Shown: positions 848-6,800, numbered from the stretch's first letter. The stretch: DNA of 64,000 nt from Salpingoeca rosetta (GCA_033442325.1 JAWQFM010000001.1:1199473-1263472), one strand, 5' to 3'. Notes: generated by a model from the letters alone, not told the origin. Translations and numbers: made by a program.

Positions 848-3800
848 TCAGCGAAACCACGTGACGCCCATCTCAGCGCCAAAGACTTCGCCAGAGTTGC
901 CAGCATCGCGGACTCGCATGTCGTTGATTGGGAGGGCTACACCCAGTGATTCGAACGAAGGAAAACAAGCAACGTAGCGCAATGAGAATGAATGAATTAA
1001 TGTCCATCGGCAAGCGAGGTAATACTGCGTCGTGCAGTCTACGGCATCTGTCAAGCAACAAAACGCAGGCAAGGGCAGGGGTCTGATTCACCTTTGGTCA
1101 GGGTTGTGTGGAACTCAAAGGGGGTGCTCGCGAGCCTGTCGTTGTGACGGCATCCATCAAGCTCGTAGTTCACCTGTCAGGAAGAAAAGAGTGCAACGTT
1201 ATTGAGGGTGAGGCACACACCGCAAATCCAAGTCCAATCACCAACCAGAGTCATCTGTCTCTGTCATGTTCTGCGTGCGGCTGAAAGCATGTACCTGAGG
1301 ACGACTCGTTTCCGCGCTGTTGTAGAGCCATGTTGTGTCGCTGGTGACGCCACCACGGAACTAAATAATGGATAGTTCAGCGGCATGCAAGCGCACATGC
1401 ACACATGATACCGCAATGAGTGAGTGATTGATTCACAAGCTTGAATTGCCATGAGGAGCAAAACATCGCATCAATGGGCGTGGTGCTAGCGTGGTGCTGG
1501 TTGCAGTGGTTGTTTGATCGCACCTGCAGTGCATTTGTGCCGTCCAAGGATGAGCCAGAATGCCACGCCAGCACGCCGTTGCAAAGGAAGAGGATGGATT
1601 GCTTTCCTTCAATTGACAACGATTGGAGGGCACCCAGTTGGGATGAATCAATGTTGTAAGGCATCCTGAAGCCGCTTGAGGTGTCGGAAAACCAACTGCG
1701 AGAACCACCAGGAGCCAACCAATCACGCAAGCTTGAAAGTTAATGAGAACCAGCACAGATTATTCGGTGCACAACCACACACACACACACACACATACAC
1801 ACAAACACACATACACACAAGCACACATACACACACATCCACACAAGCACACACACACACATCCACACATACTCAACCACACACACACACACATACACAC
1901 ATACACACACCCATACACACAAAGCTTTCGGCATACCCAATCATACGCTTACGTTGGGGAATCGCCTGAAGTTCCGAGCCACTGTTTGATTGGGATTGTC
2001 CTCTGCTTGGGTCGGACGCCAGTCCACCCACCATTCAGCTACAGCGAGCAAAGAGGATGTTGCTGGCGCTGTGAGTTGTGGGGGACACAGAGCTAACCAG
2101 AGCGAAACAAAACCACTTGAAGCAGATTAGGTGGGCATCAGGCACACTCACACCCACCCCCACCCACACACACGCACACACACACACACACACACAGCCT
2201 AGAGTGACCCACCATGTCGCATTCCAGAAACACTGCGTTTGCTGGGCTGCCGCCGTTTGGATCTGCGCCAGTGTTAGTCAGAAGGAGGAGCAGCGCGCAG
2301 TGTGGAGGGTGAGCAGAGTTGAAAGAAATGGAGTTCAGCCTTCAAGGCTCACCCACGCTACACGAAAACGGCCAGCTCACATGTACGAGTGAGACAAGCA
2401 GGAAGCCAAAAGCAGGAAGCTCGCATCGACGCGACACGACACGGAAGGAAACGTACCGAGCCAATACCACCCATCAGGGGCAGATCCGCCACTTGCGAAA
2501 AGGATGTCTGCGCAGGTGCGGCCTGGATTCAGCGGAGTACTCCCCAATTTCGTGACCGTAAAGTCTGTGCGGAACATGACGGGCTCCGGATTGGCACCTA
2601 GACAGCAGCAAGCAGGCATTCCTGAGTGAGGATGAACGTCTGAAATTGTGCGCACCGTGCATACACATCCCCACAGACGAAAACACACACACACACACAC
2701 ACACACACACACACACACACACACACACACACACACACACACACACACACACACACACACACACACACAGAGTTTCTCAGTCGCAACAAGAGCGATTAGA
2801 AGTGGTGATGGGGATGTCACGTGCACTGACATGCTCAGCCAGAGGAGGATTGTCATTGTGTTGTGTGCCACTAGTACATGGAGACGAATTACCCACCATA
2901 CTCCTCGCCGTCGTTGCCATGGTCCTCTGCAGCCAGGTCCCGGATAGGAAGTGCACGGGCGTTGCTTGTTGCAAAAATGAATTCTGTCTGCCTCCAGGTG
3001 CCATCGTTCATGGAACAGGCTGCAGTAAGGTCGGTGACAGGCAACAGAAGGATAATACTATGAGTGATGTTGAGAATTCACGAAGATCTCTCTCAGCCGA
3101 AGCAGAGATGAGAAGGCGCATACGCGTGTTGAATATGCTACAACGAGCAACTAGACAACGGACCGTCGGAGAACACGACGGGGGACGGGTTGTAGGTACT
3201 AGCCCCAGGAACGTCTTCTGGTGTCCAAACAATTCCGGTGGAGTCTCTGCAATGCCAGGCAGCAAAGCATTGATTGTGTGTTCGAGGCTGAGCACGGGGC
3301 ATGTCGAATGGTCGCAGGAGAGGAGACAAACGCAATGCGTTTCATCGCCATCATCACCGCCACCACCACCATCATCACCACCACCACTACGAATCTTCAT
3401 CATCGTCGTTGTTGTCAAATTCAGAGATTAACCAGATATACGGCGGATACGTGCACTAAAGCTATACATGTACCACGTACGCTGTTGATCGGAACCAAAT
3501 GGCTGCACCAGACAGCTTCAGGGCGGTCGAGATGGAATCGTAGCGCCAAGCGATTACACCTTTGCACAGGAAGAACAGCCTCTGCGATGCGTGGGATGAA
3601 ATGCTCTGAATTCACACAGGGGTGGTTTGAAGTGGCGGGGCGAGGGAGAAACGAGCCACAAGGTGCATAAGTGTGTGAAGATGACGAAGAACGCAGCCCA
3701 TGCAGCAGCACCAGCACCAGCACCGCAGCCCCAACCTCACATGCACTTAGCAGTGCCTGAACACTGTCATGCGTCAGTCCTCACCTGCAAGGCTGTCAGT

Positions 3801-6800
3801 TGGGAGTCGCTGATGCTCCAAGGCATGGAAATGCCGAGTGCGGACAACCAAATGCGCGTGTCACTTCCGTCATAGTGGTCTCCAGCAGGAACAGAGCCGC
3901 CAGGGTTTATCTGGGTCCAGCCACCGTTTGCCTGAAGGGCAAAACAATACGAAACCAGCCAAGGGTAATAACAAACAGCAACGGTAGGGGACGTGAGTTG
4001 ATTCTCACACACGCCAGGCACGACAAGCACATGCGCGCACGGTGAATACATGGTAGCTCGGATCCCAGCAAAGCGTTTCTGAGAGCAAGTTCAACAAGTC
4101 ACGTGTTTCATTTGACGTACCATGTCGCAAAACACCTGAAACGCGTCATCATTTCGCTGTCCGTTGGGATCTGCCGTCAACAAGGAGGAGTAATTGGAGT
4201 TACATATTTCAAAGTTGGGGGGTGGAGTGGCAACGTCAGCCAAACACTCGTGATATCAGCAAAAACACGCGACAGCTTGCGCAGCTGTTCACGCGGCAAA
4301 GCACGCACAGTGACATGCGCATTGCTGCCCCATCTGTAGGCGTCAGTCAGGACGACAACGCACCGATGAAGTAAGTGCCAGAGGGCGACGCTGGAAAGTC
4401 GCGTAGGATGTGGCTGCAGGATTTGCCAGCACGCGGCTTGGTGGTGCCATCACGAAGAGCAAACTGGAATGACACAGCGCCGTACTCCACGCTGCAAAGC
4501 AGTGACACAACACAACAACGATGAGGCCCGGTATCGGTGTGGGCAGCAGCACCCGGGCCAGGTGCAACGCATGATGGCATCTTGCAGAGACAAAACAGGG
4601 ATGAGCAATTCAGCGGAAGGCATGGTGATTGACTGACCCCCATTCTTCGCCATCGTTGCCGTCGTCATTGATTCGAATGTCCACAACAGGCAGATAATCG
4701 GGGGAGTCGGTGATGAGCTCAAACACGGTCGTCTCAGTCACCTGAGCGCAATGGCAGAAACCAACCAGGCAGCAGCGTGCAGGAAAGGGAACAGAAGCCC
4801 GGGGGGCGGGCGGGGGAGTCAGCACCATGTGACAAAGACAGCCCGCCGGCGCAGTGAACCGTGCGCCAGAGTGACGTGACACAAGGCACACAAGGCACAC
4901 AAACAGACAAACAAACAGACAAACAGACAAATAGACAAACAGACAAACAGACGAACACACAAACACAAACACACAAAATCGCATGTGTACGCACCGCGTT
5001 GGCATTGCCTTCACACCCATCGGACAAGACGTTTGGTACGGCGCCGTCTGCGCCAGGAGGACCCTGCCACACATTGCTGTTCGAGCACGAATGGCGGCAT
5101 GGTGAGAAGCCGTTGAGGGCAATGTACATGTGCGTTGGTGCGTGCGTGTGTAAGCGTGCAAACGCGGTTTGTTGGGAGAGAGCAGAGCAAAACGAAAGGA
5201 GTGTTGGGACGTGCAAGGAGTATACAAGGGCTAATGTACGCAGCACGTACAACAAACACAGCGCATATGTTATGCTGGAATCGCAGCAGCAGGCAGGCAG
5301 TACGCACTCATTGCTGACAAAGCTTCGAAACTTGGCCGCATGTGTCTCCGCGTAGGCATTTTGGTGGTTCCAGATGAGAACTCCCTGCCGAAGAAAAAGA
5401 GACAAGTGGATGGTGGTCACAGGGGAAGAGAGGAAGCGTGCGTGTTGTATCATTGAGAGCACACACATACATACTTGCATCCGCACATAGAGACGGGCAG
5501 GAAGGCAGACAGACAGGCAGGCAGCCAAAGGCACAGTTTGTCTGGTTTGCGTGCGTCGCGCTGTTGTGGAAAGCATACCTTGCAGTAAAACGTGACTTGT
5601 TGCTTGGCCGAAGTTGAATGCTCGATGAGCGCGGTCAGCTGGCTGTCGGAGATGTCGTATGCAAACGGGGCACCTCCGTAAATTGGGTCCGTAAACCTGC
5701 ATGCATCGTGGGGGTGAGTGAGTGAGTTGAGTGGGTGCAGGGGCCGGGGTTAGAGTGTTGGTGACAGCAGCATGAACACGGCGTGTTGTAGCTCATGGTC
5801 AACCCAACGTAAGAAGCACACCAGCCATGACATTGAGTAACCGAGCACAGCAAACATTTGCTCATCGCGAATCAGAGGAGGACGATCCGCAATCGTGTGT
5901 GTCGACTGAAGGCTCACCAGTTTTGCTGGTCTGTATTGTCAAAGTCGCGGTGCCTGCCCAAGGCAACACTGCCAGCAGGTTGGATGACCGTCCAGCCACC
6001 ATTGGCCACTGCATCAATTGAATAATAATCAAACACGGGCCATGTGAGCCAGGCAGGGCACCTGAATACTTGAATAGAGTTCACGCCGACGATTGCCTCA
6101 AGAGCAAGTTGCTTGGATGGCCCACGGCCACGTCCCGAATACGCGTCGAAGCACACATCACATCAAGCAAAAGCGAAAGCAAAAGCAAAAGCACAAGCAA
6201 AAGCAAACGACATACTGTCGCAAAAGGCCTGGAATGCGTCCGCGACGGTGCCTCCATTCGGATCGATCCAATACATGCCTGCAGGCAACCCATTCATCAA
6301 TCAATGGGCGGAGAACGGTGAATTCACGACCACACAAGTTGGAGGGGGGCGAATCTTCGGCTGGCCCCTTTGTGTGTGTGTGTGTGTGTGTGTGTGTGTG
6401 TGTGTGTGTGTGTGTGTGTGTGTGCGTGTGTGTGTGTGTGTGTGTGTGTGCGTGTGTGTGTGTGTGTGTGTGTGTGTGTGTGTGTGTGTGTGGTGCTGTC
6501 TGCATCTCCTTGTTGCAGTTGCTCACCATCGCCATAGACATTGCTGCCACCCTGAGACAGGAGAATATGGCCACAGGTGCGTCCGGGGTTGTCTGCGCTC
6601 CCACCCAGGCGATGACCCACACCAAGGAGGCCTGGTGTGTGTGTGTGTGTGTGTGTGTGTGTGTGTGTGTGTGTGTGTGTGTGTGTGTGTGTGTCGTGTG
6701 TGTCGTGTGTCGTGTGTGTGTGTGTGTGTGTGTGTGTGTGTGTGTGTGTGTGTGTGTGTTTGGGTTACATGCCGGTGTGAAGAAACGATCAACGGGCTGT

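What the first reader, a model, noticed from the sequence alone, without database searches (positions are those of the whole stretch)
848..6630. Three tandem collagen C-propeptide (COLFI) domains in one chain with no Gly-X-Y helix: possible single-chain pseudo-trimer
Seen: manual splicing gives three complete COLFI repeats end to end, after a signal peptide, a sushi-like module and a long coiled coil. None of this is visible in any single ORF. Established: animal fibrillar collagens carry one COLFI per chain and three chains trimerise through it; choanoflagellates are known to have COLFI uncoupled from triple helices. Inference: the three repeats may fold into an intramolecular trimer, or the coiled coil may oligomerise a multivalent head, giving a pre-metazoan ECM or lectin-like role.
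Basis: partly seen in the sequence, partly recalled or inferred. Interest (0 to 1): 0.8.

Follow-up and report, generated by a model that had tools for sequence, protein, structure and literature searches.

The report
Coiled-coil protein with three COLFI domains
A choanoflagellate (Salpingoeca rosetta) gene encodes one secreted chain with a long coiled coil followed by three complete copies of the domain that trimerises animal fibrillar collagens, but no collagen helix. The architecture is real and conserved, but whether the three copies fold into a single-chain "trimer" could not be decided here.

Summary
On the minus strand, 23 GT-AG exons (ATG 8324, stop 850-848) give a 987-aa protein:
- a signal peptide;
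- a 6-Cys module with weak CCP/sushi fold support;
- about 195 aa of coiled coil with 3.65-residue periodicity;
- three complete COLFI domains (aa 337-549, 561-768, 780-986) joined by 11-residue linkers, with no Gly-X-Y run.

Spliced RNA contigs from two studies join COLFI-1, -2 and -3 in one transcript. They skip stop codons that unspliced reading would hit after repeats 1 and 2.

The gene is S. rosetta PTSG_11601. Its public 657-aa model lacks about 418 N-terminal residues and carries a foreign tail.

Complete transcripts of Hartaetosiga balthica and H. gracilis have the same architecture. Relatives in Monosiga, Didymoeca and Choanoeca have two COLFI domains, and the S. rosetta paralog has a shortened middle one.

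The pseudo-trimer idea stays open but is disfavoured. Repeat number varies, collagen interface residues and inter-chain cysteines are absent, and AF2 pTM is 0.58. I favour a coiled-coil (probably trimeric) stalk, sitting where the procollagen stalk sits, that carries tandem COLFI heads.

COLFI without a triple helix in choanoflagellates is already published. The scan also noted a related collagen-less COLFI protein elsewhere in this genome (s1-432522).

The parts
848..8324 (-). Whole coding region of S. rosetta PTSG_11601, re-modelled: 23 exons, 2964 nt, 987 aa. Exons (high-low): 8324-7929, 7720-7331, 7134-6939, 6631-6527, 6278-6216, 6008-5918, 5696-5579, 5384-5308, 5076-4995, 4741-4638, 4491-4364, 4170-4121, 3931-3785, 3605-3481, 3246-3164, 3019-2897, 2597-2457, 2262-2213, 2038-1953, 1695-1524, 1360-1295, 1173-1092, 936-848.
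   Evidence: All introns are GT-AG, the frame is open, and phases are consistent. 15 joints were listed: all 15 by X17's RNA contig, 14 by X19's; a 16th junction, the last intron (1092->936), comes from a loose end. Two junctions within the contig's span (2038->2213 and 5696->5918) were not in the truncated table and rest on contig-length arithmetic. Exons 1-4 rest on phase-consistent splice sites and on gap-free collinear alignment with complete Hartaetosiga ORFs and the paralog. X17 depth in bins 6400-6999 also equals coverage of only the predicted exon parts (my arithmetic).
8229..8324 (-). Signal peptide, aa 1-32 (predicted).
   Evidence: By inspection: a basic n-region, a 20-residue hydrophobic core and an ARA|A site. 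Homologues P0002, P0012 and P0061 also start with hydrophobic leaders. No predictor was run.
7989..8171 (-). Six-cysteine module, aa 52-112, CCP/sushi-like fold (weak support).
   Evidence: All six Cys are invariant in 4 homologues. The AF2 model has pLDDT 71. Top Foldseek and VIA hits are nearly all CCP modules, with Z up to 6.1. No Pfam Sushi hit.
6940..7720 (-). Coiled coil, aa 133-327 (exons 2 and 3, with intron 7135-7330 between them).
   Evidence: Hydrophobic periodicity of 3.65 residues (hendecad-like), reached by 0 of 500 shuffles. Only 2 Pro and 5 Gly in 195 aa. Only weak Pfam coiled-coil-type hits.
4467..6605 (-). COLFI domain 1, aa 337-549 (exons 4-11).
   Evidence: Hit to the animal-collagen HMM at E=1.4e-37, HMM positions 42-250 of 251. 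Exon 5 alone hits Pfam COLFI at E=5e-8. The domain-1 clade across species has 100/99 support.
2572..4433 (-). COLFI domain 2, aa 561-768 (exons 11-17).
   Evidence: HMM hit at E=1e-23. phmmer to procollagen III C-propeptide 4AE2 at E=7e-14 over 202 residues.
854..2538 (-). COLFI domain 3, aa 780-986 (exons 17-23); stop codon at 848-850.
   Evidence: HMM hit at E=8.7e-34. Best Pfam stretch in P0001 is 374-576, matching profile positions 27-231 of 233.
4492..4637 (-). Intron 10, which joins repeat 1 to repeat 2 (..GNDGEEWG|VEYGAVSFQF..). Read through, it gives ..EEWGSVNHHAFR and a stop at 4610-4612.
   Evidence: Joint 4491->4638, CT..AC, in the X17 and X19 contigs. Translations.
2598..2896 (-). 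Intron 16, which joins repeat 2 to repeat 3 (..GNDGEEYG|ANPEPVMFR..). Read through, it gives ..EEYGG and a stop.
   Evidence: Joint 2594->2894 (cut +3), CT..AC, in X17 and X19. Translations.
489..847 (-). 3' UTR, at least about 359 nt.
   Evidence: Inferred from X17 record 2: record position 597 lies at 1524, so 448 nt lie below 937 (my arithmetic).

Best explanation
This is one gene and one mRNA. It encodes a secreted, collagen-helix-free protein with this order of parts: signal peptide, a small disulfide-rich CCP-like module, about 195 residues of alpha-helical coiled coil with hendecad-like periodicity, and then three complete COLFI (fibrillar-collagen C-propeptide) domains. The COLFI domains are joined head to tail by 11-residue linkers.

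Shown here: the gene structure, the transcript continuity across the three repeats, the three domains, and the COLFI fold.

Inferred: chains associate in parallel through the coiled coil, most likely as a trimer. The coiled coil ends about 20 residues before Cys1 of COLFI-1. That is the place where procollagens have their short three-stranded coiled-coil stalk, so COLFI-1 would form a procollagen-like trimeric 'flower' on a coiled-coil stem instead of a triple helix. COLFI-2 and COLFI-3 would extend this as further layers or as additional heads, giving up to nine COLFI domains per molecule.

Each domain keeps the two intra-chain disulfides Cys1-Cys4 and Cys6-Cys7 and the Ca2+ loop (DPNGG..D/N). 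Each lacks the inter-chain cysteines.

The likely role is a multivalent extracellular matrix or adhesion protein of the choanoflagellate cell coat. The ligand is unknown.
For: - Gene and transcript.
- Three complete COLFI domains.
- Fold: an AF2 model of the H. balthica orthologue's three-domain region matches 4AE2 chains at TM 0.86, rmsd 2.2 A.
- Coiled coil: periodicity 3.65, reached by 0 of 500 shuffles.
- Conserved architecture: the full architecture aligns collinearly in complete ORFs of H. balthica (933 aa) and H. gracilis (955 aa) and in the paralog PTSG_11789.
- Domain-1 orthology across species has 100/99 support, so the tandem array predates the Salpingoeca/Hartaetosiga split.
- Stalk position: the coiled coil abuts COLFI-1 in all homologues. 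The M. brevicollis junction ..STILVRDGSSRGAAAASC resembles collagen III ..DGSRK-NPARNC.
- For first-position domains the Pfam COLFI match reaches profile positions 8-12, inside the stalk part (P0009, P0006). Later domains start at 20-30.
- There are 18 cysteines, an even number: 6 in the N-terminal module and 4 per COLFI.
- Linker residues in the AF2 model have pLDDT 79-89, so the junctions are ordered.
Against: - No tool here could model several chains, so the oligomeric state is untested.
- The axial chloride-site Gln62, Arg42 and the Cys2/Cys3 inter-chain bond of collagen C-propeptides are missing in all three repeats. COLFI-COLFI trimerisation is therefore not guaranteed.
- The coiled-coil part has no significant relative in the PDB.
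- The junctions of exons 1-4 were not among the joints printed by read laying. They rest on homology and depth arithmetic.
- Function is pure inference. Expression is very low in one RNA-seq run (2 reads in 16.5 million records).
Confidence: 0.5

Rival explanations
1. Single-chain pseudo-trimer. The three COLFI domains of one chain pack around a pseudo-threefold axis like the three chains of a procollagen C-propeptide. The coiled coil then bundles several such 'flowers'.
For: - Exactly three complete domains occur in S. rosetta PTSG_11601 and both Hartaetosiga orthologues.
- The linkers are short (11 residues) and ordered, with pLDDT 79-89.
- pTM of 0.58 is above the roughly 0.35 I would expect for three independent domains (my estimate).
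- Inter-chain disulfide cysteines are absent, and a covalently linked trimer would not need them.
Against: - Relatives have two domains (P0061 M. brevicollis, P0009 D. costata, P0003 C. perplexa).
- The S. rosetta paralog has only about 105 residues of domain 2, and its locus has no room or tblastn signal for the missing exons.
- Arg42 is G/S/A and Gln62 is G in all repeats (PMC5353611).
- Only domain 1 has a stalk helix.
- No predicted aligned error or coordinates were available, so the packing geometry is unknown.
- No whole-length structural neighbour turned up in the ESM Atlas.
Confidence: 0.12
2. Monomeric or non-trimeric rod. The helical region is a single extended spacer or a dimer, and the three COLFI domains are independent binding modules (beads on a short string) that do not associate with each other.
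For: - Collagen-type interface residues are not conserved.
- pTM is only 0.58.
- Repeat number varies between species, as expected for independent modules.
Against: - A strong 3.65-residue hydrophobic periodicity over about 195 residues is typical of bundled, not solitary, helices.
- The helix ends where the trimeric procollagen stalk sits.
- The linkers are modelled as ordered.
Confidence: 0.2
3. Multivalent Ca2+-dependent lectin. The COLFI base region is related to fibrinogen-related domains, so the protein works like ficolins or intelectins and binds bacterial or matrix glycans for prey capture or adhesion. This rival concerns function and is compatible with the favoured assembly.
For: - The base region of each repeat hits Fibrinogen_C (E 1e-9 to 2e-5) and NCBIfam NF040941, the fibrinogen-like YCDxxxxGGGW domain.
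- A weak phmmer hit to intelectin-1 (E=0.007).
- The Ca2+ loop is kept.
- The architecture, an oligomerising stalk plus globular heads, is that of ficolins and angiopoietins (my knowledge).
Against: - The similarity to fibrinogen-related domains covers only about 45 residues of the base, not the ligand-binding P subdomain.
- Whole-domain fold matches to fibrinogen-type domains are poor (TM about 0.2-0.28).
- No COLFI domain is known to me to bind glycans.
Confidence: 0.15
4. Three separate tandem genes, or isoforms that stop after repeat 1 or 2, with the fused chain being an assembly artefact.
For: Unspliced reading hits stop codons 9 codons after the repeat-1 donor and 1 codon after the repeat-2 donor. 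The repeat-1 read-through tail ends in ..AFR*, like the true C-terminus ..WFR*.
Against: - The same spliced contig, with zero mismatches, crosses both junctions in two runs from two studies.
- Both junctions are in frame and restore the last COLFI strand. EWGVEYGAVSFQ and EYGANPEPVMFR compare with collagen EFGVDVGPVCFL.
- Repeats 2 and 3 have no start codon with a signal peptide.
- De novo transcripts of two Hartaetosiga species encode the same fused chain.
- DNA similarity does not extend into the read-through tails.
Confidence: 0.03

Closest known systems
C-propeptide (COLFI / NC1) of animal fibrillar procollagens, e.g. human procollagen III and I (PDB 4AE2, 5K31)
   Same: - Same domain family: Pfam PF01410, and E=7e-14 to 4AE2.
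- Same fold: TM 0.86 for the orthologue's model.
- The Cys1-Cys4 and Cys6-Cys7 pairs and the DPN..D Ca2+ loop are kept.
- The terminal strand E[FWY]G.....V.F is kept.
- An alpha-helical coiled coil lies directly N-terminal of the first domain, as the stalk does in procollagens.
   Different: - No Gly-X-Y triple helix anywhere in the chain.
- Three domains per chain instead of one.
- Cys2, Cys3 (inter-chain) and Cys5, Cys8 are absent.
- Arg42 and Gln62 are not kept.
- The chain-recognition insert is absent, and the coiled coil is about 195 residues long instead of about 22.
- No BMP1-type cleavage context can be inferred.
Choanoflagellate COLF1-only proteins reported from Monosiga brevicollis and S. 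rosetta (King 2008 as cited in PMC2852846; PMC3308698)
   Same: Same class: COLFI without collagen repeats, with Cys2, 3, 5 and 8 missing, exactly as described for M. brevicollis (PMC2852846). MONBRDRAFT_31892 (P0061) is a homologue with a signal peptide, a coiled coil and COLFI domains.
   Different: - The papers I could read do not describe tandem COLFI arrays, the coiled coil or the N-terminal Cys module.
- The M. brevicollis model has two COLFI domains, lacks the Cys module, and is fused to a MIT-domain gene model.
S. rosetta paralog PTSG_11789 (P0006, 865 aa) and the Hartaetosiga balthica / H. gracilis orthologues (P0002, P0012)
   Same: Collinear architecture over the whole length, at 38-40% identity. 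Pfam finds three COLFI stretches in each.
   Different: The paralog's middle domain is about half length.
Coiled-coil plus fibrinogen-related-domain proteins (fibrinogen, angiopoietins, tenascins, ficolins)
   Same: Secreted proteins with an oligomerising stalk followed by globular C-terminal heads. The COLFI base shares the YCD....GGW motif with these domains.
   Different: Those have one head domain per chain, and the head is a different fold beyond the base motif (TM about 0.2-0.28).

Membership tests
COLFI domain (Pfam PF01410) | Profile match above the curated cut-off (26.2 bits). | tested here: met
   P0001 (this gene) scores 250 bits with 3 stretches. Exon 5 alone scores 32.9 bits. My animal-only HMM gives three domains at 115, 70 and 103 bits.
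COLFI domain (Pfam PF01410) | Fold of the procollagen C-propeptide (base plus petal). | tested here: met
   Tested on the H. balthica orthologue (40% identical), not on the window's own chain, because the spliced protein has no reference. Match to 4AE2_B: TM 0.86, rmsd 2.2 A, E=1.7e-16.
COLFI domain (Pfam PF01410) | Intra-chain disulfides Cys1-Cys4 and Cys6-Cys7. | tested here: met
   There are four Cys per repeat at the aligned positions: 347/382/452/500, 566/598/663/720 and 788/821/890/939. The pairing itself is inferred.
COLFI domain (Pfam PF01410) | Intra-chain disulfide Cys5-Cys8, strictly conserved in fibrillar collagens (PMC2852846). | tested here: not met
   GGWT replaces GETC, and V[SMW]F replaces VCF, in all three repeats.
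COLFI domain (Pfam PF01410) | Ca2+ site in the base (Asp59, Asn61, Asp67 in procollagen numbering). | tested here: inconclusive
   The loop is DPNGGTVAD, DPNGQRNDD and DPNGGSPAN in the three repeats. The ligand side chains are kept except D67N in repeat 3. Metal binding was not testable.
COLFI domain (Pfam PF01410) | Trimerisation through base and petal contacts (Arg42 salt bridges, Arg39/Gln62 chloride site, Cys2-Cys3 inter-chain bond; PMC5353611). | tested here: not met
   Arg42 is G, S or A. Gln62 is G. Cys2 and Cys3 are absent. Arg39 is kept in repeats 1 and 3 and is Lys in repeat 2. Trimerisation itself is not testable with these tools.
Fibrillar collagen (procollagen chain) | A long Gly-X-Y triple-helical domain N-terminal of COLFI. 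| tested here: not met
   The longest G-X-Y run is 3 triplets. There is no Pfam Collagen hit. This protein is not a collagen.
Sushi / CCP module (Pfam PF00084) | Profile match. | tested here: not met
   No Sushi hit at E<=10 for this module in four homologues.
Sushi / CCP module (Pfam PF00084) | About 60-residue beta-sandwich with Cys1-Cys3 and Cys2-Cys4 bonds and a conserved Trp. | tested here: inconclusive
   The AF2 model has pLDDT 71. VIA gives Z 6.0, rmsd 2.2 A over 59 residues to beta2-GPI CCP1, and the hit list is almost entirely CCP modules, but Foldseek E is >=0.1. The module has six Cys rather than four, and no conserved Trp.
Parallel trimeric coiled coil (procollagen-stalk-like) | Heptad or hendecad hydrophobic periodicity. 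| tested here: met
   Period 3.65, reached by 0 of 500 shuffles.
Parallel trimeric coiled coil (procollagen-stalk-like) | Three-stranded state. | not testable with these tools
   Only single-chain prediction is available, and there is no significant PDB relative.

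The most novel reading that the evidence does not exclude
The three COLFI domains of one chain close into an intramolecular pseudo-trimer, a single-chain version of the procollagen C-propeptide 'flower'. In that case a lineage next to animals solved COLFI trimer assembly by gene-internal triplication rather than by chain selection.

A related and more probable evolutionary reading: a coiled-coil-plus-COLFI trimer is the pre-metazoan precursor into which the Gly-X-Y helix was later inserted, and the short procollagen stalk is the remnant of that coiled coil.
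Probability: 0.12. Interest if true: 0.75.

Novelty: new variant of a known kind. Interest (0 to 1): 0.5.

Why it matters
Fibrillar collagen assembly starts at the COLFI trimer, and how that module arose before animals is an open question in matrix evolution.

This locus, with its orthologues, shows that in choanoflagellates COLFI sits at the end of a long coiled coil, at the position of the procollagen stalk, and can be arrayed two or three times per chain. That gives a concrete, testable model for the pre-collagen state: a coiled-coil-nucleated COLFI oligomer. S. rosetta, where gene knockouts exist, is a tractable system for asking what COLFI did before it served collagen.

The work also corrects a public gene model. 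PTSG_11601 lacks its signal peptide, Cys module, coiled coil and half of COLFI-1, which hides the architecture from database surveys.

Tried and rejected
- Spliced protein in the remote tools. The 987-aa spliced protein has no reference, so it could not be sent to Pfam, AF2 or the big searches. I used exon pieces, the public partial protein P0001, the orthologue P0002, and an HMM built in the sandbox.
- Exon 20 (57 aa) against 1.84 billion representatives. It found the gene's own public model, the paralog and choanoflagellate orthologues. It also found bacterial DUF7151 repeat proteins (E 1e-11 to 1e-4). These are sums of many weak repeat matches at 24-28% identity to an EF-hand-like repeat, so I rejected them as relatives.
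- Word searches with P0002 and P0001. Beyond choanoflagellates they returned mostly bacterial or metagenomic proteins sharing only the ~45-residue YCD..GGW base motif, plus ordinary animal collagens. No other full three-COLFI chain appeared.
- ESM Atlas shape search with the three-domain model. It gave only single-domain matches and says nothing about inter-domain geometry.
- PDB sequence search with the coiled coil. Only chance-level hits.
- Ancestral terminal exon idea. I considered that the read-through tail after repeat 1 (..AFR*) is a relic of an ancestral terminal exon. DNA alignment does not extend into the tail, so I dropped the idea.
- Odd joint 3722->4647 in three runs. It comes from 21-mers of a CAG-type low-complexity stretch in intron 13 and of the GNDGEE-coding stretch, matched by unrelated abundant transcripts. 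It is not a splice.
- Literature. Searches for PTSG_11601, PTSG_11789, F2TWR1 and F2TZ55 in papers, and in the supplements of the S. rosetta genome paper, found nothing.

Full report
**What is in the sequence**

The region is eukaryotic and intron-rich, and many introns carry (CA)n/(GT)n microsatellites. No single ORF shows the protein. Stop-free fragments on the minus strand from three successive blocks each hit Pfam COLFI on their own: 6166-6300 at E=5e-8, 2892-3077 at E=4e-6, 1380-1739 at E=3e-4, and weaker pieces at 4094-4255, 3465-3611 and 2380-2601.

**Transcript evidence**

Sequencing runs of the same organism hold the stretch. Several probable RNA runs hold about 0.2-0.3 of its words, which is the exon share. 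I laid four runs on window:1000-6999, keeping to the 6,000-letter limit.

- Two Logan RNA contigs from different studies (X17 record 2, 2218 nt; X19 record 3, 1847 nt) are spliced at 15 listed joints, all CT..AC on the + strand, which is GT..AG for a minus-strand gene.
- X17's contig runs from the 3' UTR through repeat 3, repeat 2 and into repeat 1; X19's shorter contig reaches about 5308, within repeat 1.
- A loose end at 1092 is the sequence at 907-936, which fixes the last exon.
- From contig length and bin depths, X17 record 2 reaches into exon 5 (about 6260). A separate low-depth contig covers only the predicted exon parts of 6570-6631 and 6939-6999. Both points are my arithmetic, because the joint table was truncated.

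The two junctions that matter are in frame.

- Repeat 1 to repeat 2 is 4638|4491 (..GNDGEEWG|VEYGAVSFQF..).
- Repeat 2 to repeat 3 is 2897|2597 (..GNDGEEYG|ANPEPVMFR..).
- Each downstream exon supplies the last COLFI strand of the preceding domain. Compare collagen EFGVDVGPVCFL.
- Without splicing, the frame stops after 9 codons and after 1 codon respectively.

The refutation test "separate genes per repeat" therefore fails.

**Gene model**

The model has 23 exons, with every intron GT-AG and 121-307 nt long. The coding sequence is 2964 nt and the protein 987 aa. The ATG at 8324 is the first in-frame ATG after an upstream stop.

Exons 1-4 were not among the printed joints. They are supported by phase-consistent sites and by gap-free collinear alignment with complete ORFs from two other species and with the paralog. 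One example is ITAYQ|GDVIARVGE against IVAYQGDVIAQAGG.

**Identity**

The organism is Salpingoeca rosetta. The gene is PTSG_11601 (XP_004999076.1, UniProt F2TWR1), annotated as a 657-aa hypothetical protein. That model has two faults.

- It starts at an intronic ATG just before exon 7 (MSYNTP..). It therefore lacks the signal peptide, Cys module, coiled coil and the first half of COLFI-1.
- It ends in an 80-residue tail that is not encoded in this window; I take it to be transposon (copia)-like from its sequence, but that was not tested.

**Domains**

- aa 1-32: signal peptide, judged by inspection.
- aa 33-50: Ser/Thr-rich stretch.
- aa 52-112: a module with six cysteines that are invariant in four homologues.
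- aa 133-327: helical region with a 3.65-residue hydrophobic period, reached by 0 of 500 shuffles. This is close to the 11/3 of hendecad coiled coils.
- aa 337-549, 561-768 and 780-986: three COLFI domains, found by an HMM built only from four animal collagen C-propeptides. E-values are 1e-37, 1e-23 and 9e-34, and each hit covers HMM positions ~42-250 of 251.

The repeats are 36-42% identical to one another. Repeat 2 matches the procollagen III C-propeptide 4AE2 at E=7e-14 over 202 residues. There is no Gly-X-Y run longer than three triplets.

Each repeat has four cysteines, at the positions of collagen Cys1, 4, 6 and 7. Cys2, 3, 5 and 8 are missing. That is the pattern published for M. brevicollis COLF1 modules (PMC2852846).

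**The N-terminal module**

Pfam gives no Sushi hit for any of four homologues. An AF2 model from a four-sequence alignment is of modest quality (pLDDT 71). Its Foldseek hit list is almost entirely CCP modules, but with E>=0.1. VIA-align gives Z 6.0, rmsd 2.2 A over 59 residues to CCP1 of beta2-glycoprotein I. "Sushi-like" is a fair description of a probable fold. It is not a demonstrated family membership.

**Relatives**

- Complete transcript ORFs of Hartaetosiga balthica (933 aa) and H. gracilis (955 aa) have the same architecture end to end, at 40% identity. Pfam finds three COLFI stretches in each.
- S. rosetta has a paralog, PTSG_11789 (865 aa), with the same layout but a middle domain of only about 105 residues. 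In its locus the interval between the end of domain 1 and the C-terminal exon of domain 2 is about 800 bp, and it shows no tblastn signal for the missing exons.
- M. brevicollis MONBRDRAFT_31892 has a signal peptide, a coiled coil and two COLFI domains. It then runs into a MIT/MIT_C part that looks like a fused neighbouring gene model.
- Didymoeca costata and Choanoeca perplexa transcripts have two COLFI domains.
- A tree of single domains puts all first domains in one clade (100/99) and the last domains together (89/92). The array is therefore older than the Salpingoeca/Hartaetosiga split.

**The pseudo-trimer question**

I could fold only one chain and received no coordinates or PAE.

The H. 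balthica three-domain region (649 aa, 17-row alignment) gave pLDDT 80 and pTM 0.58. The inter-domain linkers are modelled with pLDDT 79-89. Single domains superpose on 4AE2 chains at TM 0.86. For three independent domains I would expect pTM near one third, and for a confident compact body above about 0.75. So 0.58 is undecided.

Indirect evidence leans against a closed single-chain trimer as the family's principle.

- Repeat number varies: 2, about 2.5, or 3.
- Collagen interface features described by Sharma et al. (PMC5353611) are not kept. Arg42 is G/S/A. Gln62 of the axial chloride site is G. The Cys47-Cys64 inter-chain bond is absent.
- Only the first domain has a preceding helix.

The pseudo-trimer is not excluded. 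An 11-residue linker could span the distance, and a covalent chain would not need inter-chain disulfides.

**Favoured mechanism (inferred)**

In procollagens, residues 8-29 of the C-propeptide form a three-stranded coiled-coil stalk that leads into the base (PMC5353611). In all the choanoflagellate homologues a long coiled coil ends 12-20 residues before Cys1 of the first COLFI. The M. brevicollis junction (..LVRDGSSRG....SC) resembles collagen III (..ISPDGSRKNPARNC). Pfam matches of first-position domains reach into the stalk part of the profile, from positions 8-12.

I therefore read the protein as a parallel, probably trimeric, coiled-coil stem with a procollagen-like COLFI-1 head. COLFI-2 and COLFI-3 would be further layers or free heads. 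The product would be a multivalent secreted matrix or adhesion protein. The ligand and the biological role are unknown. A lectin-like role is possible, but it rests only on the ~45-residue fibrinogen-like base motif.

**Novelty**

COLFI without a triple helix in choanoflagellates has been published (PMC2852846, PMC3308698, PMC5120351, PMC5353611). I found no paper describing tandem COLFI arrays, the coiled-coil stem or this gene. The sequences are in public databases, partly mis-modelled. I rate this a new variant of a known kind.

Another first-stage note of this scan (s1-432522) describes a collagen-less COLFI protein with a coiled coil on another piece of the same genome. That agrees with what I see for the paralog.

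Noticed in passing
window 848-8324 (minus strand); public model P0001: The public gene model PTSG_11601 / F2TWR1 (657 aa) is wrong at both ends. It starts at an intronic ATG near 5790 (MSYNTP) and lacks aa 1-418 of the real protein. Its last 80 residues look copia-type to me (untested) and are not encoded anywhere in this window (best tblastn E=5.7).
   Followed up: yes
window 4610-4637 and 2889-2896 (minus strand): If introns 10 or 16 were retained, translation would stop after COLFI-1 (..EEWGSVNHHAFR*) or after COLFI-2 (..EEYGG*). That would give one- or two-domain isoforms. No RNA evidence for or against such isoforms was obtained.
   Followed up: partly
window introns, e.g. 6330-6500, 6640-6770, 7150-7260, 2690-2790, 1750-1950: Long (CA)n/(GT)n microsatellites sit in many introns of this gene. 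They create long spurious His-Thr and Cys-Val ORFs on both strands.
   Followed up: no
L001:6743-7548 (S. rosetta GL832957.1, paralog PTSG_11789): The paralog's middle COLFI domain seems to have lost its base and central exons, leaving about 105 of 215 residues. This may be a real internal deletion or may reflect missed divergent exons.
   Followed up: partly
P0009 (Didymoeca costata transcript): Its last COLFI domain keeps GWTC and ends in ..VGDVCFL, so Cys5 and Cys8 are present. The Cys5-Cys8 bond would then predate animals and was lost in the Salpingoeca, Monosiga and Hartaetosiga proteins. This is contrary to the picture drawn from M. brevicollis alone.
   Followed up: no
P0061 (M. brevicollis MONBRDRAFT_31892): The model joins a signal peptide, coiled coil and two COLFI domains to MIT and MIT_C domains. 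This is almost certainly a fusion of two neighbouring genes in the annotation.
   Followed up: no
window 3702-3722 and 4647-4668: Abundant unrelated transcripts in three runs share 21-mers with a CAG-type stretch in intron 13 and with the GNDGEE-coding stretch. This produces a false 'joint' 3722->4647 in read laying.
   Followed up: yes
ESM Atlas clusters: Animal clusters combine COLFI with Ig domains (Cnidaria) or with C1q (Arthropoda). COLFI outside fibrillar collagens is therefore not confined to choanoflagellates.
   Followed up: no
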